From NCBI GenBank assembly GCA_026936335.1, contig JAPMXV010000046.1:62001-126000 (forward strand): a DNA stretch of 64,000 nucleotides, given 5' to 3'. This document shows positions 43,491 through 55,681 of this stretch, piece by piece. The stretch comes from Mantamonas sphyraenae STR306 (lineage: Eukaryota > Protista > CRuMs). Both the position numbers and the translations under genes were made by a program. The number at the start of each line of letters is the position of its first letter. Position 1 is the stretch's first letter. The notes beneath the pieces are model-generated. The model was not told where the DNA came from, searched no databases, and was given only the letters and a program-made list of their open reading frames with translations.

Positions 43491-45211
43491 CTACTTCTTG
43501 CTCTTCTTCTTGCTCTTTCCCTTGTCCTTCTTGGCTGACTTGTCCTTCTTGGCCTTCCCCTTGTCCTTTTTGCCCTTTTCCTTCTTGCCCTTGTCCTTCG
43601 TCTTCTCCTTGCCCTTCTTGGGCGACTTTTTCGAAGCCTTCTTCTCCTTGCCTTTGCCCTTGGACTTGCTCGATTCCCCCGAGGACTTGCCAACCTTGAC
43701 AGTGAGCTGTTTAGCTTTTCCGGACGAGCCTGACGTGGAGCCTGAGCTGCTTCCTGCGCCCGAGGCCTCTGCCCCGTTGCCGTCGTCATCGTCTTCGTCG
43801 TCGTCGTCGTCGCCCTCGTCGTCGCCCTCGTCATCGCTGCTGCCACTGGAGCTGGAAGAGCCACTCTTCTTGAGGGCCTTTTTGTAAGCGATTTCCTGCT
43901 CGATTTTGCGCTCCTCGTCCTCGTCCAGCACGAGGTTGGCGAGCATATTGTGCGCAGTTGTCTTTTTCATGACCGTGCGTGTGATCTTGTTGCCGACAAT
44001 CTTGGCAGAGTTGACCAAGGCACACAGTTTGTCGTTTGTGTCGGCCAGGGATGTGTCACGCCTGGGCAGGACAGGCACAAAGCAAGTGAACGCTGGGCCT
44101 CCAAGCGCCTCTGCGTTGCACATGCAGAGGGTGGAGTTGATGTACGAAGCCTGTTGGCCCTTGAGCAGTGCGTCATACACTCCCTCCATAGCCTCCAGTT
44201 CAGAGACGGCGTCCTTGTGGGAGTTGACCTCGACAACGGACAACTCAAGAGAGCCCATGTGCACCGCAGCCACTCCTATGCGCTGTACCTCGATGCCCAG
44301 CACCGTGTGCACGGGGCCCGGGTGGTCGTCGCGCCACTGCTTAAGGCATTGGTGTGCGGTGCGAGTCAGCCTGCGTAGTGCCAATTGGCCGCGGATGATC
44401 TGCCACTTGAGGTTTGTTTCGACGCTGCGCCGAAAACACGCACACACGCACACACGCATGCAGAGTGAGCACGATCCGGTGTGAGCATCCAATACGTCGC
44501 TGCATGCTTATGGGCGACGTCTATGCAGTGGTGGGCCTCGGCGGGCAGCCGAGACATGGGCCACGAAAGCCGGATAAGGAAGGCAGAGCCGTGAGGGGAA
44601 AAACTCACAAGCCACGACGATCTCTGCGCATCGGCAGCTTTTCGGCGCCCTGCAGCAGGTCGTACACGGTGTCTTCGTGGACCATCAGATAGCTGGCTTT
44701 CATGGCAAACCTGTTGGCCATGCGGTCTGCTGACGAAAGGGTGGCAAAGAGGGCAGACACCACCTCGTCGACGATGGTCGGCTCCTCCCCAGCTTCCTGG
44801 CCACTGGCTCGCAAATAATCAGGTGCCTGTTCCGCAGCGACCATGGCCAGGACAGATACTGGGCAGTTGTGATGCATGGGGTGTGTCTGAGTGTCAATGG
44901 ACTGCCTGCCATGCGCACGTGCGCCCTGGAACGTGCAACTGACCGTTTCCTCCCTCCATCAGCTGCTCCAAGCGCAGGCTGTCGGTGTGCTCAGCCAACG
45001 AGGCCTTGTCGACAGCAATGCCATCAAACTTGTACGATGACGATGTGCCTCCTTCCTTGATGATCTCTGCGTCGTGGTCGCCCGTGACTTGGATTAGATC
45101 GACGTCGCTTTCCCCTTGCGCGTCGTGCACCAGCAGGATGCTCCGCACTTGCGCTGTTTCGGCCACCACCGCTCCTGCCTCCCCACTGGAAGCATTGTCA
45201 GAGGTGCTCAT
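43491..45211 (-). CDS. Highly degenerate kinesin-motor-like protein (no P-loop) with acidic and Lys-rich tail; exons 45211-44944, 44858-44609, 44424-43491
   Basis: Kinesin landmarks in order: YKFDGI, MKASYLMVHEDTVYDLL, RG|FVETNL, SYINSTL..EALGGPAFTCFV, SAKIVGNK. Two GT-AG introns join the frames. Confidence 0.6.
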
Positions 45212-45317
45212 GCTCTGGTGGGTGGCTGGATTGTGTGTTCAGTTCAGTTGGGGGAACGAGAGACTGAGACGCTTTTGTTGGTTTCGGATTGCACCTGAGC
45301 ACATCCACTCCTCACAC

Positions 45318-46333
45318 TCACTCCACACGTGTGCACGTCCCGTTTCCCAGGCTCGTCATGTACTTGAGCGTGGTGCGCGTCTCGTCTGCGACCAGATCCG
45401 CCGGAGACACGCTGCCGATGCACAAAGTGTGTCCACCGCCACACATGGCCTGCTTGAGCAGCTTGGTCAGTGTGCTGTCGCGGTAAGGCACGACTGTGCT
45501 GCTGGATCCGCTCGCACGCTTCTCGTGCAACACCTCAGCCATGGCCTTGAGCGCCTGCTGGCCCTCGTACACCGCCGCGTCCTGCCTGCTCGCGGGACGG
45601 AACGACGCAAGAAGCACAAGCTGCAGGCGACTGGTCACCTCTTCGTCGTTTTCCTCAAACGTGAGGTCCAGCTCAACAAGGGTGTGGCACACCGAGACGA
45701 CACCCCCGTTCTCGCCATCGCTTCCGACGCTGCAGTTCTCCAGCGCAGCCTCGATCTTCTGCATCGCATCTTCATATGACGCGACGCTGTGCGTGCTGAT
45801 GCCTTCCACGAAAGCACCCGTCTTGGGCTGGATGCGCACACGCAAGTTGGCATTCTCGGTTTCCACAAGGTCTCGCACCGAATCACCCACCTCCAACACC
45901 TTGAGTTCCACCTGCAGGTTTTCCACATTGTCCGCCTGCGCAAACACGTCCATGCACGCACGCGGCACAATGCCTCGATTCTCGCCGTAGCCCAAGGCCG
46001 CGTACGCCTTGCCCGAGCCTTGCGCTCCACAGGCAATCACGCACACGTCCTCGCCCTCCATGAGGCAGTCCACCAGCTGCTTGCCCACTTGATCGTACAC
46101 GTCCTCCTGCTCAAAGTTCTCGTACACGTGGTCGAATTCGTACTTCTCAACCAAGGGTCCGCCGCTGAACTCATCGCTCAAACTCAGTGACAGCGATTTG
46201 GGCCCCTCAACGGTCACCGCAGCCGTGCTCTTCACATCTTTCTCAAGTGTGTTGAACGGGCGCACCGTGATTACGCTTGTGCAAGGGCCCAGTGTCGAGC
46301 GCTTTTCGTGCTGCGGCTTTGCGCCGCTGCTAC

Positions 46334-46372
<39 letters not shown>

Positions 46373-49300
46373 CTGCCACACGGCTCTTGCCATCGACCAA
46401 GTACTTAAGGAAGCGCAAGGTGTCCCTGGACTCCTTGGCGACCATGTCGGCGGGCGAAACGGCTGCAATGAACAAACCGTGCCCAGAGCCGCTCAGACTG
46501 TTCTTCAACAGCATGGTGAGTGGGGTGGTGCGGTAGGTCACGACGGCATTCTTGGCCTTGTTGTGTCGCTTCTGGTGAAGAGCTTTGGCCACGTTGCCCA
46601 GGGCTGACAAGGACAGGCTGATCTCTGCGTCGATGGTGTCGGCGATCGATGCGACGGACGCCAGATCAACCATTTGCAGAACACTGCTCACCTCTTCGTT
46701 GTCCTTTTCAAACGTGATATGCAACTCGAAGATGGTGTGGGCCATGGACGCCGTGGAGTTTCGCTCAGTGGCGCGGATGCTGCGGTTTTCTGAGGCCCGT
46801 TCCATGAGCTGTTGGACCTCGTCGTACGAGTTCACCCGGTGACTGCTGAGTCCGTCCACGTAGTAGCCTGTCTTGGGTTGCAAGCGCACACGCAGCGACT
46901 TGTTGCCCGTGTCGATCAGATCTTGCACCGAATTGCGCACTTCCATGGCCTTCAACTCCACCTGCAGGTTGTCCACCTGGTCTCCCAGGCTGAACACCTC
47001 GGAACAGATGCGCGGCACAATGCCTGGCTTGTCGCCGTAGCCCACCATGGCGTACGACTTGCCAGAACCGGTTGCGCCGTACGCCAGAACCGCCACGTCC
47101 TGACCTTGCAGCAGCTGCTCCAACAGCGGACGACCCACCTGCTCGTACACTTCTTCCTGCTCGAATCCTCGTACACGTGGTCAAACTCAAACGTCTCTGG
47201 CGCGCGCTCCTCCCCCAGGTCGACCGTGATGCTCGTGGCGTTTTCCACCGTCACAGCACGTTTGCATCCGCTCGTCTTTTCCAAATGGTTGAACGGACGC
47301 ACAGTCACCATGCCCATGGTGGTGCCGGTTGCCTTCTTCTCCTTCTTGGAACGTTTGGGCTTGCTGCTGCTGCTTCCGCCGCTGCTGCTGCTGCTTCCGC
47401 CACCGCTGCCACTGCTGCCTTCGTCGTTCATGTCATTGGTCACCGACCCACCTGTCAGCAGAGAGACAAACCTGAGAGTGGAGCGCGATTCCGAGGCGAC
47501 CAAGTCCGCAGGCGAGACTGCGCCAATGAAGACGGTGTGTGTGCCCGCCGCCCAGGCCATTCTGCAGCAACCTGGTCAACGCGCTGTCTCGGTAGGGCAC
47601 GAGAATCTTCTTGTTGGGGTTCTTCCGCTGTTTGTTCAGCGAAGACGCCACGTTCGAGAGCACTGTCAAGGAGGTATTGCACTCCGTGATCAACTTGAGG
47701 ATGTGCGGATCCGAGGATGTGTGGTAGGAAGACAAGTCGACAAGCTGCAACTTGCTGGTCACAGTTTCGTCTTTGGTCTCAAAGGAGAAGTCCACCTCGA
47801 TGATGGTGTGACCCAAGGACGACGTCGAGTTCTGATCGGTCGACACAACCGTGCGGTTTGCAATCGCGCTCTGAAGCAGAGCCTCCACTTGCGTGTAAGA
47901 CTCCACCACCTTGCTTGTGAGTCCTTCCACAAAGACACCATGCTTGGGGCTGGTGCGGACCTTGAGGGCCTTCCTGGACGAGTCCAGAAGGTCGAAAACA
48001 CCGCCCATCACCTCCATGACCTTCATCTGCACGTTGAGGTTGTCCACTTTGTCGCCCAGGCCGAACATTTCGTTGCAGATGCGCGGCACAATCCCAGGCT
48101 TGTCGCCGTAACCGATAAAAGCGAACGACTTGCCCGAGCCGGCAGCGCCGTATGTGATTACGCACACATCCTCGCCTTCCAGCAAACGGTCCAAGAGTGG
48201 ACGGCCCACCTCTTCGTACACGTCGGCTTGATCAAAGTCCTCGTACACGTGGTCAAAGGTGTAGGTTTCCGAGCCGCGTCCCTCACCCCGGTCCACCGTC
48301 ACCGTGGTTGCACTGGTCACGCTCACTGCTCGCCCACTGTTGGAGGATGTCTCGAGACGGTTGAACGGGCGCACGGTGATCATGCCCATGATCGTGCCCC
48401 CCTTCGTCTTCTTGCGACGTAGGGGTTTTCCGCTTTCGCTGCCACTGCTGCTGCCACTGCTGCTGCCACTGCTGCTGTTGCCACTTGCAGACGAAGACGA
48501 GGCCTTGGACGCCTTGGAGGAGGACGACAGGCTGCTGACGTCGTCGACCTGAGAGGCTCCAAACGCCGTCAGGAATCGCAGCGTGGACAGACTCTCTTCA
48601 AACATGATGTCTGCTGGCGACACAGCTCCGATAAACAGGCGTGTGCCGTGGCCGTTGAGGGAGCGCTTGAGCAGCATGGTGAGGGGCGAGTTGCGGAATC
48701 CGACGACATTCTTTTTCGCCCTCCCCTTGCCTTTGCCCTTGCTTTGGGCGCTAGCGGCCACCACACGGCCGAGGATGTTGAGCGATCGGTTGACATCGAT
48801 GGCTGCCTTGTCAGAGGTGTCGATGATGTGCTGCTGGCCGACCAGATCCACCAGTTGGAGCGTGGCGGAGGTGGTTTCGCCGTCGCGTTTGTGGGAAACG
48901 TTAACGGACACCACAGCGTGCTTTGACAACGCCAGTGAGTTCATGGCGCTGGATCGCGTTTCTCGCTGTCGCTGTCCAACCTCCATCACTCGCCGCAGGT
49001 GGTCGTAGTCATCGACTTTCTTGGTCACCACGCCGTCCACAAAAGGCCGTTTGTCACGACCTTCGCGCACGCGCAGTTCGCCCTTCTTCTTGGTCAACAG
49101 ATCCGTAACGCCGCCCATGCACATCTCCACCATGCTGATGGTCACCTCCAGTCCTTCCAGCTCACCCTCCTGGGCAAATACCTCGGTGCAGACCCGCGGC
49201 AACAGGCCCGGATTCTCGCCGTACCCAATGGCCGCATACGATTTGCCTGAGCCTGTTGCTCCATACGTCATGATGCACACATCGTCGCCGTTGAGAAGTG

Positions 49301-49529
49301 ATTCCACGAGCGTGGTGCCCACGTCGGCGTACACGTCTTCCTGCGAAAAGTCCTGGTACACGTGGTCAAACGCAAACGCGTATGACAAACTTTCGTCGTC
49401 GGGGTTTTGCAGCGTAATGGTCGAATCATCGACACGCTGAACAATTGCGGAACATCCCATGGTGCGCTCACGATTGTTGAACGGTCTGATGGTCAGCACC
49501 GTTGTCGAAGAAGTGTGCTTCGAAGACAT
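45318..49529 (-). CDS. Protein of four tandem kinesin-3 (KIF28/KLP-6-like) pseudo-motor domains, ~1403 aa; compensating indels at ~47545 (+G) and ~47164 (-T)
   Basis: Four units (about 49500-48570, 48400-47465, 47320-46400, 46290-45360), each TxRPFNxxE..FDHVY..GxxGSGK..GYG...G[IL][VL]PR..LTxLL..VSPAD..TL[RK][FY], separated by Ser/Gly linkers. Confidence 0.85.
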
Positions 49530-49583
49530 TTTTGTTTGGGTGGAGGACAGGTCGCTGCCATTTTTTGCCCCACTTGCATGTGC

Positions 49584-51129
49584 TTACACAGGCATCTCCC
49601 GGTGACGTGTCACCTTTTTCTTGCGCCCTGCAAGCAAGGCGCTGTAGTCCAGCGTTCGAATGGACTCTCCCATGCGCTTCTTGTCGTTTGTTCCCGTCAC
49701 ACAAAACACGGTCGAGATGGCCGCCCCACTGTCGAATGACTCGCGCAGCAGACGCGTCAGCACGTGATTGCGATACGGGATACGCTTCTTGTTGTCAGCG
49801 CGCGCTCGGATGCACTCTTTCAAGGAGAGCAGCGAGGAGTTGATGTGTGCTGCCTCTTGCCTCGTCAGCGACTCCATCGTGTCCATGGACTGCACCTCGT
49901 TGCCCGCAAGGTCCACAAAGTTGAGCGTGTTGTTCATCAACAGTGCGTTCTCGTCCTCATCCATCACTGCCTGCACATTGGCACGGGCCTGGTCGACGGC
50001 GACGGACTGGGCAGCGTAGGTCTCCTCCAGTTCCTCCAGTGCTTGTTTCGTCTCGCTGTCCATTGCATCCATCATGCGATGGGCGTGCGAGTTTCCACCT
50101 CCCACGACCTGCTCGTCCACATCGGCATTTGATTCCTGCTCTTGCGCCGCTGCGCTCTCCATTGCTTTTCCAATCTCCACAATCAGCCCATCCCGGGCGT
50201 ATCCAATTTCAGTCAACGTGTCTTCAGCCTCCACGACTGCCGCCTCTGCATCCAACAGAGCTTGCGTGACAACCGCGAACCTGATCAAGCAGTGCGACCG
50301 CGAGCTCTGGTCATGCACATGATTGGCCTTGGTTTGCCTCATCTCACGACCTACGTCTATCAGAGCAGACGCCTCGTCCACTGACTTGACCAGAGTCTGT
50401 TCGAGCCCACGCACGTGCGTTCGTCGGTCGCTTGACGTCAGCACCGCCACTTCCGCCCGCCCGTTCAGCAGATCGAATGTCGATTTGCCATACACTTCCA
50501 CCATCTCCATACGCAGCTCATACTCTCCTTGCAGCTGCTCCAGCGTCTCCAACATCGCCTGTGCCCCAAGCAGTGCCAGTCCTGGCTGCTCCGGGTTTCC
50601 AAAGATTGTGTGGGTCTTGCCACTGCCTGTGTAGCCATAGCAGAAGCATGTTCCTGTGCGACCACCATGCCCATTCTGAAGCGTCAGTCACCTGGAATTC
50701 CGTTGTTGCCGTTGGCAATTGGCGCGCCAAGGGAATTCCCCGTCTCCCGCACATACCACATCCTCCCAATTGCAGTCGCTCCACCAGAGGCAGGCACACA
50801 CTCTCGAAAAGACCTTGGGTGTCCACTTCGGGCCCAAAGGCCTCGTCCATGGAGAAACAATGGGTGATGGGTTCGTTGAATTCAATCCCTCGCCTGGAGA
50901 TGCGCAGGTGATCCAACGTCATGGTGACCTTGCCCCTTCCATCCTCATCGTCATCCAAAATCCGCTCGTCAAACTGGCCCGGCTCGTCATCCAGAAGTGG
51001 GCGGATGCGGCAAAACACCTTTGCTTTCGGTGCCTCGTTCTCCGCAATGGCTATGCGCTTGCGCACAGACTGCCCGGCGACAGGCAGAACGGTGTTGCCG
51101 CTGTCATTTTCTGAGCGGGTGGTGGACAT
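49584..51129 (-). CDS. Motor-only orphan kinesin with ~100-aa helical insert; exons 51129-50757, 50653-49584
   Basis: VFCRIRP, CYGYTGSGKT (spliced), VHDQSSRSH, FVDLAGNE, INSSLLSLKECIRA, IPYRNHVLTRLL. Confidence 0.88.
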
Positions 51130-51199
51130 GGTCGATACCTTTGTGTGTTGGCTGCCGCGGCGCAGCCGCACACAACCCTGCAACCTCTCCTTGCCTCCC

Positions 51200-54100
51200 A
51201 TGAGCAAGAGCAAGGCTTTCTCCAACTCTGGAGAGTTTCTTGCAAGTAAAGACAGAATACTCACCGTGACGGCCATACGGCCGTTCAATTCGAGGGAAAC
51301 GAACCGCGACGCAAAGAAGGCGATTTCAAAGCGCGACGCCAACACAGTCGTGTGCACAAACGCAGAGGGCGAGGAGAGGGAGATCGAGCTGGACTATGTG
51401 TACGAAGACTTCACTCAAGCGGAGGTGTTTGAAGACATCGGCCAAGATATCCTGGAATCCGTACGAGAGGGAAACAACGTCCTCTTCCTCGTTTTCGGCC
51501 AAAGCGGCTCGGGCAAGAGCTACATCGTCATAGGATTCGGCGAGAACAAAGGCATTTTCCCGCGTGTGTGTGAAACCCTGTTTGGATCGACCGAACTCCA
51601 GAGTGCCGCCATTTCCATGGTGGAGGTCGGCCACATGGGCGTGCACGACCTCCTCTCCGGCGAAAAGATAGCACGCACAGACTCAAATTGGTCCAACGTG
51701 CCAGAACGTGTCGTGGAAACACACGAGCAGGTGATGGAGGCCATCGACACCGGCTCCATGAACCGTTCCGTGGCCGCTACAAACATGAACGCGACGTCCA
51801 CACGCGGTCACACCCTCATTCGGCTCCACTTTACGTTTCGTGGAGGACAACAATCAAATCTCTGCATCGTGGACATGGCTGGCAGCGAGCGCGTGGCTTT
51901 GTCTGGTGTCACGGGGATCCGGTTGAAGGAGTCGTCGTTCATCAACACGTCGTACGTCAGGCTGCGCAACGTGCTTACCGCCGTCCGTCGTCGCGGACAA
52001 GATCAAGCCAACTTCCATGTGCCCTATCGTGAATCGATCTTCACACAGCTTCTGCAGCCGTACCTGGACTGGGGGCGGGTGGCCCTCTTTGGCGCCGTGG
52101 CTCCAACCCTGGACACGTACGACGAAAGCATGATGACTCTCCGCACCCTGGACGAACTGAAAGACCCCGAGTCTGTCGCTGAGAGCAGACTGAGGAGTGC
52201 TAGGCGACTGAAGGCACAAGCCGAGGCAAACCTAAATAGCGGCAGCGCGGGCAGCACCAATGCCAATGTCGACACGCACGGCGAGCACGACGACGGATGG
52301 AAAACGCAGGACGGATTGTTGGACATGTGGAATGCCCACCTGCAGGCTCTTGGCAGTCTGCAGAACGCATCCACAGTGCCAAAAAGCGACTCGGGAAGCC
52401 GGTTGCACCTGGCATGGCTCTCCGACGAAGCGACCAGCAACATTGGTGACATTGGACGTATGGTGGCAGTCCACGTGCACTCCGGGTTGATGCGTGGACT
52501 CAATGCGTGTGTGATGACTACGGGAAACGCCTCGACCACATCAGCAGACGGAATGGCATGCATCGACGAGGAGGTTGTCCGACAGCTGGTCTTGTGCCGG
52601 CAAGGAGAATGGCAAGGACAGTTGAATGTGTTCTCGATCTGGATTCGAACAGACGACGCCGTGATCGACCTTGGCATGGATGATAGGCAAGAGGTTATGG
52701 TCACCTACACGGACGGGATGGTGATTGAAAACTGCACCATGGCCACCATTGCATGTGTACGGGAGTGGCAAACGTGGCGCACAGCGTGTGAGGCTCGTGT
52801 AGATCAACTGGGAGGCCTCCAAGGGCCGCAAACACTCAAGAACGGGATCGTGGTCCATTTGCTCAAACCACATGGTGCTCAAGGCGCAGCTGTGGCGATG
52901 GTTCACTTGGCGAACGACGCAGCATCTTCACTGAAGGAGTATCGCTGCAACCAAGACTTGGCGTTTGCGGACGTGCTCGACAGTATGAGTCACATGGCGG
53001 TGCAGCAGGTGTTGAGGCTCAAGTTGACGCAACAGCAGAGGGTGGTGTGCGACATCTTGCGAGACTGCTTGACGGGAAACGTGGCGCTGGTGCACCGCGG
53101 CGCGTTGAAAGATGGCTGGGAGGCCCTGGACTCCATCTCCGAAGGAGGTTGCAGGCCGGTGGTGCGACCGATGAATCATTGGTCAACATGGGTGCAAGCA
53201 CAAGCAGAGACGGTGGAGCGAGTGGCAACGCTCGCGGCGGCGCTGTGTTCGTCTCGACGGGACGCAGGCGTGTTGCTCGTGGATCAGGACGACGAGACAG
53301 TGCGCAGGGTGTTGAGCACAGCCGCTGAAGCCGTGTTTGCACAGGCGCTGGAAGGAGACACGCTGTGGGTGAGTGCATTTGCATGGACCGAGCAGGACCA
53401 GGTTGGAGACACAAGGCAGGCGAAGAGGTTGCACACAGGCGTTGCGTCCGAACTGCAGCAGTTTGTGGAGACAGAGTGGGAACACACCGTGCATTGGGAG
53501 TGGGCAGTGTGGTCAGAAACCACACACGAACAGCGATCGCTGCACGTGCACGTATCACAGGATGCGAGCAAGGCTGATGGCACAGAGTGGCCGCTGGCCG
53601 AGTGGTCCGTGCTGGTGAACAGTGCCGATGCAGCCAAGGCATGGCAAAGCGAGCCACAACGGGACCTGGTGCGATGTGTACGCGTGCGTCCCGTGCTGGA
53701 AAGGGAGATGGTGCACGAGGACAACAGAGACCCGTCGTCATACAGCAACGTGGACGTGGGTGGAGCGTGTGTGAGGTGGCGACCTGGCTTGCTGGCGGAA
53801 GCCGAGCACGTGTTTCACAATGCGTCCTGCGGCGATATGTGGAAGTCACTTGGACCGGGATTGGTAGAGGCGGTTTTGCACGGGGAGAGGCCAGCGATGG
53901 TGAGTGCGTTTGGGGGAGTGGGCACGGGCAAGTCGTACGCGCTGTTGGGGGTTGAGGGCAAAGAGTACGGGTTGATTGCCCGCTTTGTGCAGCAGGTGCT
54001 GGAAGAGAGCGATGGGGAGGCACGTGTCGATGTGGGTGTTCTCATGTGTCGCTACAAGGCAACCGGGGTGATGGATCTGCTGGCGGACGACGAGCCCCAG

Positions 54101-55681
54101 AAGCGCAGGTTGCGTCAGACTCGCAACGAACCCCATGCACACGTGGAGGACGAGGTGCGCGTTGCAGTCCACAGTGCAGAAGACGTCCACAAGCAATTGA
54201 ACAAGGCGATGCTCACCCTTCGACGATGGGTGACGCTCATGGGCACGCGTTCGTCCGATTTCATGTGGATGGCCGAGGTACAAGTGAACGGCATCCCTGT
54301 GCAGTTTCTGCACCTAAAGGTGATGGACCCTTCAATGACTGCGTACCGCACGCTGATGATGGATCGCATGCACCTTGCTTTCCACCTGGTAACCGGGCAT
54401 TTGGACAAGCCGTTCCTGCGCTGGCGCGAATTGCCCCTGACGCGCCTGGTACAGCGCGTGCTGGACCATCCACATTCCTATGAGGTGCAAATGGCCTGTG
54501 TTGCCCCGACCAAAACGAACGCCAAGTCGGAACTGGCACTGACAGAGGCGACGCAGTCCACACTGGAATTCCTCAATGGCTTGGTGGACGCTCGCGACCT
54601 ACCGCAGCTCAAGACCCTGCTGCGCAAACACAGCAGCGACTATGAGCTGGTCACCATGGACGAGCTGGCACAAGAAGAGCGAGACGCAAGGTGGGACTCT
54701 TCCTCCACGCTCTCCTCCTCCTCCTCATCGTCGTCGTCGTCGTCTTCACAGGCATGGATGCAGGAGTTGAACGAAGTTATGGTGGAGAACATCATGAGAG
54801 AGTACTCGGTGATGGTAGACGAGCGCTCGGAAGATGGCATGGACTGTTTGAGCGTGCAGGACGAGCAGACGCTGGTGTTCAAGGAAGACGAAAGGACGTT
54901 TCAGTTTGACCGCGTCATGGCACACAAGCACCCAAGCGAGGTGTGGAGCGGCATTCGGACAGGTATTGTGGGTCAGTTTGTCAAGGGCAGCCACGACGGC
55001 GTGGTGATGCTGTATGGGCAGACTGGAGCCGGCGACGAGGCCTTTGCAAGCCACCTCGCCAATTTCGCGAAAGACTCGCTGGCGTGCATGCAGGCGGAGA
55101 CCAAGCTGTCAGTGAGTATGTCTGTCGTGCGTGGTGGCCAGTGGATTGACTTGTTGGTGGAGGACGGAGTCATGGACAGCAACGACAGCAAGCGTGCTTT
55201 CACCCGAGTCAAGTGGGTGGAATTGGACACAATGGTCGAGCTGCAGCACTGGTACAAAACGGCATTCGGTACAAAGATGCAGGACGGAGGCGTGGCTGGT
55301 TCCTCGGACGACACCGCAGTCGTGGCCATTCGCAACTCGAACAACACCTTTTACTTTGTGCGACTGCCCGGTTCGCAGCGCCTGTACAGCAATCAGGGTG
55401 ACGAGAACGAGCTCAAGGCGCACAGGGAAGCTCAGTACGCACTGTCCAGTGTACTGAATGTGCTCGCGGAGCTCCTGAAGGAGTCCAGCCGCAGCCGCTT
55501 CATTCCGTGGCGCGATTCCATCCTGGCCAGGAACTTGCAGGCTCCTTTGACAGAAGGCCATCTGTTCTTCTTCACCCATGTGCTGTCACATGTCACCGCG
55601 TACGAGGAGTCACTTTCGTCGGTGCGTTGTTTGGACCGCCTGGCAAGTTCCGGTGGGGGGGGTTCGAAGCGACGCAGGTGA
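51200..55681 (+). CDS. Multi-head kinesin (1493 aa): one intact motor followed by 3-4 degenerate motor domains
   Basis: Head A has AIRPFNSRE, GQSGSGKS, NATSTRGH, DMAGSER, VPYRES. Later heads have VRVRP/GGVGTGKS/WRELPLTRLV and FQFDRV/LYGQTGAG/RLPGSQR/IPWRDSILAR. Confidence 0.82.
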   Translation: MSKSKAFSNSGEFLASKDRILTVTAIRPFNSRETNRDAKKAISKRDANTVVCTNAEGEEREIELDYVYEDFTQAEVFEDIGQDILESVREGNNVLFLVFGQSGSGKSYIVIGFGENKGIFPRVCETLFGSTELQSAAISMVEVGHMGVHDLLSGEKIARTDSNWSNVPERVVETHEQVMEAIDTGSMNRSVAATNMNATSTRGHTLIRLHFTFRGGQQSNLCIVDMAGSERVALSGVTGIRLKESSFINTSYVRLRNVLTAVRRRGQDQANFHVPYRESIFTQLLQPYLDWGRVALFGAVAPTLDTYDESMMTLRTLDELKDPESVAESRLRSARRLKAQAEANLNSGSAGSTNANVDTHGEHDDGWKTQDGLLDMWNAHLQALGSLQNASTVPKSDSGSRLHLAWLSDEATSNIGDIGRMVAVHVHSGLMRGLNACVMTTGNASTTSADGMACIDEEVVRQLVLCRQGEWQGQLNVFSIWIRTDDAVIDLGMDDRQEVMVTYTDGMVIENCTMATIACVREWQTWRTACEARVDQLGGLQGPQTLKNGIVVHLLKPHGAQGAAVAMVHLANDAASSLKEYRCNQDLAFADVLDSMSHMAVQQVLRLKLTQQQRVVCDILRDCLTGNVALVHRGALKDGWEALDSISEGGCRPVVRPMNHWSTWVQAQAETVERVATLAAALCSSRRDAGVLLVDQDDETVRRVLSTAAEAVFAQALEGDTLWVSAFAWTEQDQVGDTRQAKRLHTGVASELQQFVETEWEHTVHWEWAVWSETTHEQRSLHVHVSQDASKADGTEWPLAEWSVLVNSADAAKAWQSEPQRDLVRCVRVRPVLEREMVHEDNRDPSSYSNVDVGGACVRWRPGLLAEAEHVFHNASCGDMWKSLGPGLVEAVLHGERPAMVSAFGGVGTGKSYALLGVEGKEYGLIARFVQQVLEESDGEARVDVGVLMCRYKATGVMDLLADDEPQKRRLRQTRNEPHAHVEDEVRVAVHSAEDVHKQLNKAMLTLRRWVTLMGTRSSDFMWMAEVQVNGIPVQFLHLKVMDPSMTAYRTLMMDRMHLAFHLVTGHLDKPFLRWRELPLTRLVQRVLDHPHSYEVQMACVAPTKTNAKSELALTEATQSTLEFLNGLVDARDLPQLKTLLRKHSSDYELVTMDELAQEERDARWDSSSTLSSSSSSSSSSSSQAWMQELNEVMVENIMREYSVMVDERSEDGMDCLSVQDEQTLVFKEDERTFQFDRVMAHKHPSEVWSGIRTGIVGQFVKGSHDGVVMLYGQTGAGDEAFASHLANFAKDSLACMQAETKLSVSMSVVRGGQWIDLLVEDGVMDSNDSKRAFTRVKWVELDTMVELQHWYKTAFGTKMQDGGVAGSSDDTAVVAIRNSNNTFYFVRLPGSQRLYSNQGDENELKAHREAQYALSSVLNVLAELLKESSRSRFIPWRDSILARNLQAPLTEGHLFFFTHVLSHVTAYEESLSSVRCLDRLASSGGGGSKRRR

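What the first reader, a model, noticed from the sequence alone, without database searches (positions are those of the whole stretch)
45600..49260. All four heads keep the P-loop lysine but lose the switch I Arg / switch II Glu catalytic pair
Seen: P-loops GATGSGKS, GAAGSGKS, GATGSGKS, GAQGSGKA. Switch I (canonical NxxSSRSH) reads NSLALSKH, NSTSSLGH, NSTASMAH, GGVVSVCH. Switch II (DLAGSE) reads DLVGQQ, DLSSYH, DLASVA, LLASFR, with a short L11. The L12/alpha5 microtubule interface is retained (GFRNSPLT, PYRDSALT, TYRTTPLT, PYRDSTLT) and heads 1-3 have Lys-rich K-loop-like L12 (KGKGKGRAKK, KQRKNPNKK, KRHNKAK). Established: the Arg-Glu salt bridge is needed for ATP hydrolysis, and the kinesin-3 K-loop binds tubulin acidic tails. 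Inference: nucleotide-binding, non-motile pseudo-motors; selective motif loss with fold conservation argues for function rather than decay.
Basis: partly seen in the sequence, partly recalled or inferred. Interest (0 to 1): 0.85.

Follow-up and report, generated by a model that had tools for sequence, protein, structure and literature searches.

The report
Four-headed, catalytically dead kinesin
A single intact gene of a small marine flagellate (most likely Mantamonas sphyraenae) strings four kinesin motor heads together with no stalk or tail, and all four have lost the residues needed to burn ATP, so the protein is probably a static multi-site microtubule binder rather than a motor.

Summary
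The minus-strand gene 49529..45318 encodes four tandem kinesin motor domains (Pfam PF00225). They are joined by Ser/Gly-rich, then Lys/Arg-rich, linkers of 36 to 58 residues. There is no stalk or tail.

All four heads keep the P-loop Gly and Lys. All four lack the switch I Arg and the switch II Glu. Both residues are present in 161 of 161 of the nearest kinesin heads from a library of 1.84 billion proteins. Heads 2-4 also lack the switch II Gly. Head 4 also lacks the P-loop Ser/Thr and the switch II Asp.

The window breaks the frame twice, near 47544 and near 47163-47165. Short-read contigs of the same organism correct both breaks, so the gene is an intact ORF of about 1,404 codons.

Four results argue for a working protein:
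- Differences between read contigs and window give pN/pS of about 0.17.
- Head 4 folds confidently (pLDDT 89) as a kinesin-3-type head.
- The P-loop is one of the two most conserved stretches among the four heads.
- A metatranscriptome holds identical pieces of the gene.

The four heads form one clade inside kinesin-3. Their sister is head 1 of the neighbouring multi-head gene, so the loss was probably one event followed by duplication. No orthologue was found anywhere.

Microtubule binding and nucleotide binding remain inferred, and both are doubtful for head 4. Other first-stage notes of this scan describe the same stretch.

The parts
45318..49529 (-). Whole gene: ATG at 49529, stop at 45318-45320. 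About 1,404 codons once the two assembly errors are corrected. Four kinesin heads, no stalk, no tail.
48564..49514 (-). Head 1. P-loop GATGSGKS, switch I NSLALSKH, switch II DLVGQQ, Lys-rich L12. It is the most canonical head and the basal one in the tree.
48390..48563 (-). Linker 1, 58 residues: Ser/Gly-rich, then a basic patch just before beta1 of head 2.
47453..48389 (-). Head 2. P-loop GAAGSGKS, switch I NSTSSLGH, switch II DLSSYH, Lys-rich L12. Contains the window's first frame break.
47542..47544 (-). Assembly error 1. The window has one base too many at 47544, beside two wrong letters at 47542 and 47543. Contigs of runs X1 and X2 omit the base at full depth, which restores the frame (reads ...G-G-G-A-H-T-V-F-I-G-A-V...).
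47318..47452 (-). Linker 2, 45 residues: Ser/Gly-rich, then basic.
46386..47317 (-). Head 3. P-loop GATGSGKS, switch I NSTASMAH, switch II DLASVA, Lys-rich L12. Contains the window's second frame break.
47163..47166 (-). Assembly error 2. The window lacks one base here. Both alleles in runs X1, X2 and X3 carry an extra base (behind 47163 or behind 47165), and both restore ...H-V-Y-E-D-F-E-Q-E-E-V-Y...
46278..46385 (-). Linker 3, 36 residues: poly-Ser, then weakly basic.
45321..46277 (-). Head 4, the most degenerate. P-loop GAQGSGKA, switch I NGGVVSVCH, switch II LLASFR, no K-loop, net charge about -23. The protein ends just after alpha6.
49530..49583 (-). 54-nt spacer between the stop of the upstream kinesin gene (TAA at 49584-49586, in frame with the four-head ORF) and the ATG. 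It is dense in SNPs and indels among read contigs. The stop is kept (TAA or TAG) in every allele, so the spacer is non-coding and the two genes are not fused.

Best explanation
This is one intact gene for a stalk-less protein of about 1,404 residues. It consists of four tandem motor domains derived from kinesin-3, joined by flexible Ser/Gly-rich linkers that end in basic patches.

The ancestral head lost the ATP-hydrolysis and microtubule-activation relay: switch I Ser-Ser-Arg, switch II Gly-Ser-Glu, the following Arg, and the L11/alpha4 Glu. It was then duplicated internally. The fold, the P-loop Gly and Lys, and the L12/alpha5 tubulin-contact Arg-x-x-x-Leu-Thr were kept.

The most likely mode of action is a non-motile, multivalent microtubule-binding protein. 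Heads 1-3 carry Lys-rich L12 loops and a P-loop that probably still binds nucleotide. They would dock on neighbouring tubulin dimers as rigor-like clamps. Linkers of 36 to 58 residues are long enough to span the 8-nm repeat. The protein would then staple, stabilise, mark or block microtubules. Head 4 is acidic and more eroded, and is more likely a non-binding or regulatory module.

Shown: the architecture, the motif loss, the intact frame, purifying selection, the fold, and the kinesin-3 ancestry. Inferred: no ATPase, nucleotide binding, microtubule binding, and the cellular role.
For: - Four PF00225 domains lie in one frame.
- Read contigs correct both frame breaks.
- The motif columns were compared with 161 canonical heads and with 93 family-conserved columns.
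- Seventeen of 19 other kinesin heads examined in the same genome keep SSR[S/A]H plus DLAGSE. The two exceptions are the neighbour gene's head 1, which still keeps the Arg and Glu, and a head on C71.
- pN/pS is 0.17, P = 4e-4.
- The P-loop block is one of the two most conserved stretches among the heads.
- The head 4 model has pLDDT 89 and pTM 0.88, and its best matches are KIF1A, KIF14 and KIF13B.
- The four heads are monophyletic and sit inside a kinesin-3-like clade.
- An aquatic metatranscriptome holds three identical 151-nt contigs.
- KIF5A R204Q/W mutants of the same Arg lose microtubule-stimulated ATPase and are non-motile, yet still hold microtubules on glass (PMC5498027).
- The R203-E236 salt bridge is described as universally conserved (PMC4383081).
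Against: - No biochemical datum exists.
- The KIF5A Arg mutants showed reduced, not increased, microtubule affinity in AMPPNP. Loss of the relay network could therefore weaken binding.
- The alpha4 and L11 contacts are eroded in heads 3 and 4. Head 4 is strongly acidic.
- The AlphaFold model is least confident in L11, alpha4 and L12.
- No orthologue was found, so long-term conservation cannot be shown.
- The RNA evidence is three low-depth contigs from a metatranscriptome that could contain DNA.
- The DNA runs may come from the culture that was assembled, so they are not an independent population sample.
Confidence: 0.6

Rival explanations
1. It is a tandem array of tubulin-binding or partner-binding modules that does not decorate the microtubule lattice. 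It might bind free or curved tubulin dimers, as TOG arrays or stathmin do. Or it might pair with and regulate active kinesin heads, for example those of the neighbouring genes, with the P-loop acting as a nucleotide sensor.
For: The P-loop is strongly conserved while the lattice-sensing relay (L11 Glu, alpha4 Asn) is eroded. Head 4 is acidic. The gene sits in a cluster of kinesin-family genes, and its sister is the neighbour's apparently active head.
Against: The L12/alpha5 Arg-Leu-Thr contact is kept in all four heads, and heads 1-3 have K-loop-like L12 loops. Both are features for binding polymerised tubulin and its acidic tails. No partner-binding element was detected.
Confidence: 0.2
2. 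At least one head, most likely head 1 (which keeps the switch II Asp and Gly), is still a slow ATPase using non-canonical residues. The protein would then be a very slow or conditional motor.
For: Head 1 keeps the P-loop GKS, switch II D-L-x-G, the alpha4 Asn and the richest K-loop. KIF5A R204Q keeps a low residual ATPase.
Against: Head 1 lacks both switch I serines, the Arg and the switch II Glu. All are 161/161 in the nearest kinesins. There is no neck linker consensus, neck coil or dimerising stalk.
Confidence: 0.08
3. It is a decaying pseudogene or an assembly artefact. A recent tandem duplication would be losing function, and the frame breaks in the window would be real.
For: The window itself has two frame breaks. 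Catalytic motifs are lost. No orthologue is known. Neighbouring kinesin genes are also split across ORFs in this assembly.
Against: Both breaks are absent from read contigs, and at 47163-47165 both alleles restore the frame. An open frame of 1,404 codons is extremely unlikely by chance at 59% GC. The estimate is roughly 1e-21, from a stop frequency of about 0.033 per codon (my calculation). pN/pS is 0.17. The heads are 35-55% identical to each other, so the duplication is old, yet the fold is still predicted confidently.
Confidence: 0.07

Closest known systems
Kinesin-3 motor domains (KIF1A, KIF13B, KIF14, KLP-6, KIF28P)
   Same: They are the best sequence matches in the PDB and in the protein collection, and the best structural matches. 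The heads fall inside a kinesin-3-like clade with 100/99 support. Heads 1-3 have a Lys-rich L12 like the kinesin-3 K-loop.
   Different: There is no FHA domain, neck coil or tail. Four heads sit in one chain. Switch I Arg and switch II Glu are lost, and L11 is shortened. Identity to kinesin-3 heads is only 29-35%.
Naturally ATPase-poor kinesin-like proteins (Drosophila Cos2, C. elegans VAB-8, yeast Smy1; KIF26 and KIF7 from my own knowledge)
   Same: They are kinesin-fold proteins reported or suspected to bind microtubules without normal motor activity. [quoted passage not shown]
   Different: Those proteins have one head per chain plus long non-motor regions. They belong to other kinesin families, and none is a tandem array of heads. 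No sequence comparison with them was made here.
Rigor or salt-bridge point mutants of kinesin-1 (KIF5A R204Q/W, S202N)
   Same: The same switch I positions are changed. The mutants are non-motile and lose microtubule-stimulated ATPase, but still tether microtubules (PMC5498027).
   Different: Those are single substitutions in an otherwise intact dimeric motor. Here the whole relay network is replaced, and the changes are fixed in a wild-type gene.
The neighbouring multi-head kinesin gene (window 50921-55681, + strand)
   Same: Its head 1 is the sister of the four heads (99/98 support). It is also a multi-head chain with degenerate later heads.
   Different: Its first head keeps the switch I Arg and switch II DMAGSE. 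Its later heads are far more eroded (HMM scores of 48 bits or less). It is longer and contains non-kinesin spacers.
Database gene models with two canonical kinesin heads in one chain (P0020, P0021, P0099)
   Same: They have more than one kinesin motor domain per predicted polypeptide.
   Different: Their heads keep SSRSH and DLAGSE. They have coiled-coil or other tails. They are not related to this gene beyond family level, and some similar models (P0019, P0022, P0023) look like duplicated-assembly artefacts.

Membership tests
Kinesin superfamily (motor-domain fold) | Significant match to the kinesin motor-domain profile over its full length | tested here: met
   PF00225 scores E = 3e-124 for the ORF holding heads 1-2 and 2e-107 for the ORF holding heads 3-4. 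Per-head scores are 169-219 bits.
Kinesin superfamily (motor-domain fold) | Three-layer alpha/beta kinesin fold | tested here: met
   The head 4 model has pLDDT 89 and pTM 0.88. Foldseek gives TM 0.85-0.88 to KIF1A, KIF14 and kinesin-8. Heads 1-3 were not modelled.
Catalytically competent kinesin motor | P-loop GxxxxGK[ST] | tested here: met
   Met in heads 1-3. Head 4 has GKA, so it is not met there.
Catalytically competent kinesin motor | Switch I NxxSSRxH with the Arg that bridges to switch II | tested here: not met
   The Arg is replaced by S, L, M and V. It is 161/161 Arg in the nearest kinesins.
Catalytically competent kinesin motor | Switch II DxxGxE | tested here: not met
   The Glu is replaced by Q, H, A and R. 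The Gly is kept only in head 1. The Asp is lost in head 4.
Catalytically competent kinesin motor | Microtubule-stimulated ATPase and motility | not testable with these tools
   Needs purified protein.
Kinesin-3 family | Motor domain groups with kinesin-3 in a phylogeny | tested here: met
   A clade with KIF28P, an FHA/PX kinesin, a Giardia kinesin (labelled kinesin-3-like only from its hits here) and the genome's own canonical kinesin-3-like gene has 100/99 support. The set of named references was small.
Kinesin-3 family | Lys-rich insertion in L12 (K-loop) | tested here: met
   L12 holds 6, 5 and 4 Lys/Arg in heads 1-3. Head 4 has only 2, so it is not met there.
Kinesin-3 family | FHA domain and neck coil after the motor | tested here: not met
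   Pfam finds only Kinesin and Microtub_bd domains, with no FHA. The sequence after alpha6 is a Ser/Gly-rich linker.

The most novel reading that the evidence does not exclude
This would be a new class of structural microtubule-associated protein built entirely from rigor-like kinesin heads. Four nucleotide-locked heads on flexible tethers would occupy consecutive tubulin dimers. They would act as a roughly 32-nm staple or ruler that stabilises or patterns the microtubular roots of a gliding flagellate. It would have evolved by inactivation and then internal amplification of a kinesin-3 head.
Probability: 0.25. Interest if true: 0.8.

Novelty: new variant of a known kind. Interest (0 to 1): 0.62.

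Why it matters
ATPase-dead kinesin-like proteins are known, but only as single heads attached to long non-motor regions. A natural polypeptide made of nothing but four tandem kinesin heads, all inactivated yet kept under purifying selection, would show that the kinesin head can be reused as a repeatable microtubule-binding module. It would also provide a natural counterpart to engineered tandem or rigor kinesins. Each head is a natural experiment on which parts of the motor are needed for binding and which for hydrolysis. The gene comes from a member of CRuMs, a poorly studied deep eukaryotic lineage whose cytoskeleton is almost unexplored at the molecular level. On the practical side, the public assembly has two frame-breaking errors in this gene, and they would split or truncate any automatic gene model.

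Tried and rejected
- **Orthologue searches.** All came back without an orthologue. The word-indexed search with the 698-aa ORF gave at best 33-34% identity, to fish KIF28P. The exhaustive HMMER search with a four-head profile against 1.84 billion representatives gave 51,643 kinesin hits. Its top multi-stretch hits are canonical kinesins or duplicated gene models. The metagenome contig scan gave at most 31% identity. Exact look-up showed that six proteins of the window are not in the collection. Cross-species dN/dS was therefore impossible.
- **Literature searches.** Searches for natural multi-head or pseudo-kinesins returned only work on dimers, engineered tandem kinesins and one fungal 'pseudoKinesin-21' mention. 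Nothing on Mantamonas kinesins was found.
- **Fusion with the upstream kinesin gene.** Rejected. The in-frame stop is kept as TAA or TAG in every allele, and the spacer carries indels.
- **Apparent insertion in the head 1 K-loop.** Read-laying table 5c shows one, but it comes from a different contig. The main contig spans the site without a gap, so I disregarded it.
- **My own IQ-TREE command.** It failed, and I used treekit instead.
- **Tubulin-head complex prediction.** Not attempted, because alpha-tubulin plus beta-tubulin plus a head exceeds the size limit.
- **The joined four-head protein.** It was used only inside scripts, with X at each of the two frame breaks. Searches were done on the pieces separately.
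Full report
**What is there**

The region lies in a GC-rich (about 59%) stretch. Two long minus-strand ORFs (47433-49529 and 45318-47150) and a short one in another frame (46952-47560) together encode four kinesin motor domains. Pfam PF00225 scores E = 3e-124 and 2e-107, with two domains in each long ORF.

Read across the two frame changes, with X at each break and in scripts only, the product is 1,405 positions long. It has four heads of about 315 residues each. The linkers are 58, 45 and 36 residues, Ser/Gly-rich and ending in Lys/Arg patches. Head 1 starts a few residues after the ATG. The protein stops just after alpha6 of head 4. There is no coiled coil, FHA or tail domain.

**Is the frame really broken?**

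The window needs a +1 shift near 47544 and a -1 shift near 47165. I laid Logan contigs of three DNA runs of the same organism on 45250-49650.
- At 47544, runs X1 and X2 lack one base at full depth, beside two substitutions.
- At 47163-47165, every contig in X1, X2 and X3 has one extra base. There are two alleles, and each restores Asp-Phe.

Both breaks are therefore consensus errors of the long-read assembly at heterozygous sites. The real gene is one ORF of about 1,404 codons.

The upstream kinesin gene ends with an in-frame TAA only 54 nt before the ATG. The stop is kept (TAA or TAG) in all alleles. The spacer carries 7 SNPs and indels in 54 nt, so it is non-coding.

**Which organism**

The assembly has 25,061,354 bases in 78 contigs at about 59% GC. 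These figures match the published FALCON assembly of Mantamonas sphyraenae: 25.06 Mb, 78 contigs, 59.19% GC, diploid (PMC10492846). This identification is an inference from assembly statistics. The run names are coded.

**The motifs**

Alignment to KLP-6 and KIF1A, and to KIF28P, Giardia and Bodo kinesins and the neighbour's head, places the quoted strings in the canonical columns. I then counted residues in 161 of the nearest kinesin heads from the 1.84-billion-protein library.

| Column | 161 nearest kinesins | Heads 1 / 2 / 3 / 4 |
|---|---|---|
| P-loop Gly, Lys | 161/161 | kept in all four |
| P-loop Gln | 157/161 | Ala in all four |
| P-loop Ser/Thr | 161/161 | S / S / S / A |
| Switch I Ser-Ser | 161/161 each | A-L / S-S / A-S / V-S |
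| Switch I Arg | 161/161 | S / L / M / V |
| Switch II Asp | 161/161 | D / D / D / L |
| Switch II Gly | 161/161 | G / S / S / S |
| Switch II Glu | 161/161 | Q / H / A / R |

Ninety-three columns are at least 90% conserved in 64 canonical heads. The four heads keep 55, 52, 50 and 48 of them.
- Lost in common: the first Arg of RxRP, the IYNE block, the Arg after DLAGSE, and the L11 Glu.
- Lost in heads 3 and 4 only: the alpha4 Asn.
- Kept in all four: the L8 Arg, the L12/alpha5 Arg-x-x-x-Leu-Thr, SPA, and the alpha6 residues.

L11 is 4 to 8 residues short. L12 holds 6, 5, 4 and 2 basic residues in heads 1 to 4. In the same genome, 17 of 19 other heads examined keep SSR[S/A]H and DLAGSE.

**Function or decay**

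Seventeen single-base differences between the read contigs and the window fall in the coding sequence. Eleven are synonymous and six are not. That gives pN/pS of 0.17 and a binomial P of 4e-4 against neutrality. Any residual assembly errors would inflate the non-synonymous count, so the estimate is conservative.

The tool that picks the most conserved stretches of the four-head alignment chose the block around FxQxxVY and the P-loop block. This suggests that the phosphate-binding loop is still constrained.

Head 4 is the most eroded head. It is nevertheless predicted with pLDDT 89 and pTM 0.88, and matches KIF1A, KIF14 and KIF13B at TM 0.85-0.88. The lowest confidence is in L11, alpha4 and L12.

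An aquatic metatranscriptome holds three 151-nt contigs identical to heads 2 and 3. This is weak evidence of transcription.

**Origin**

In two maximum-likelihood trees the four heads form a clade with 100/97 support. Head 1 is basal, and heads 2-4 group together (100/98-99). The sister is head 1 of the neighbouring multi-head gene at 50921-55681 (99/98), which still has the switch I Arg and DMAGSE.

The whole group sits in a kinesin-3-like clade (100/99) with KIF28P and the genome's canonical kinesin-3-like gene on contig 60. Long branches make the sister relation less certain, but the physical adjacency of the two genes supports it.

The simplest history is one inactivation of a kinesin-3-derived head followed by internal duplications. 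The inactivated sites then drifted freely, which explains the different replacement residues in each head.

**Mechanism**

Published work bears on the missing residues. The switch I Arg to switch II Glu bridge is described as universally conserved and as part of the network that links the microtubule face to the pocket (PMC4383081). KIF5A R204Q/W and S202N lose stimulated ATPase and motility but still tether microtubules, with somewhat reduced affinity (PMC5498027).

I therefore infer heads that cannot hydrolyse ATP in response to microtubules. Heads 1-3 plausibly still bind nucleotide and tubulin: they have a P-loop, the second Arg and the Pro of RxRP, the L12/alpha5 Arg and K-loop-like L12 loops. 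Head 4 probably binds neither well: it has GKA, Asp replaced by Leu, no K-loop, and a net charge of about -23.

With flexible tethers of 36 to 58 residues, the heads could sit on adjacent tubulin dimers. That would make a multivalent, non-motile clamp, stabiliser or roadblock. This step is inference.

**Comparison and novelty**

By fold and phylogeny the heads belong to the kinesin superfamily and to kinesin-3. They fail the tests for a competent motor, and they lack the kinesin-3 FHA and neck.

ATPase-poor kinesin-like proteins are known (Cos2, VAB-8, Smy1), but only as single heads. No orthologue or similar four-head dead array was found in the protein libraries, the metagenomes or the paper library. 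I class it as a new variant of a known kind.

Other first-stage notes of this scan describe the same stretch and its neighbours. None had been followed up.

Noticed in passing
window 49584-51357, minus strand: The upstream kinesin gene keeps SSRSH and has DLAGNE at switch II. It is split between two overlapping ORFs (49584-50555 and 50518-51357). The P-loop region reads out of frame, so there may be another assembly frameshift or an intron. Its stop codon is in frame with the four-head gene and only 54 nt from that gene's ATG.
   Followed up: partly
window 50921-55681, plus strand: A neighbouring 1,586-aa ORF has one near-canonical kinesin head (STRGH, DMAGSE) followed by several strongly eroded kinesin-like segments. 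Its first head is the phylogenetic sister of the four heads.
   Followed up: partly
window 43491-45211, minus strand: Downstream of the four-head gene lie further kinesin-like fragments in three ORFs. PF00225 gives a weak hit at 44605-44877. They end in a very Lys-rich tail and start only about 107 nt after the four-head stop.
   Followed up: no
L041 (G000 contig 71, 22599-23384): Another kinesin head in the same genome keeps a P-loop but matches neither the switch I nor the switch II pattern. It has a very long branch in the tree.
   Followed up: no
P0020, P0021, P0099: These public gene models from unnamed organisms carry two canonical kinesin motor domains in one chain. One is followed by MyTH4/FERM-like sequence. 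One combines an N-terminal and a C-terminal head. They may be real double-motor kinesins or fused gene models.
   Followed up: no
window 46812-48422, plus strand: A 536-aa open frame runs antisense to heads 2 and 3. It is most likely a by-product of GC-rich codon usage rather than a gene. It was not tested.
   Followed up: no
window 46321-46377 and 48428-48482: Short-read contigs of all three DNA runs break at the poly-Ser/Gly coding repeats of linkers 3 and 1. The repeat lengths there are not verified by reads.
   Followed up: no
window 47704 and 47711: All three DNA runs differ from the window at these two positions. The changes would be His to Pro and Asp to His in L11 of head 2. The window's letters may be further assembly errors. 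The switch II motif itself is not affected.
   Followed up: partly
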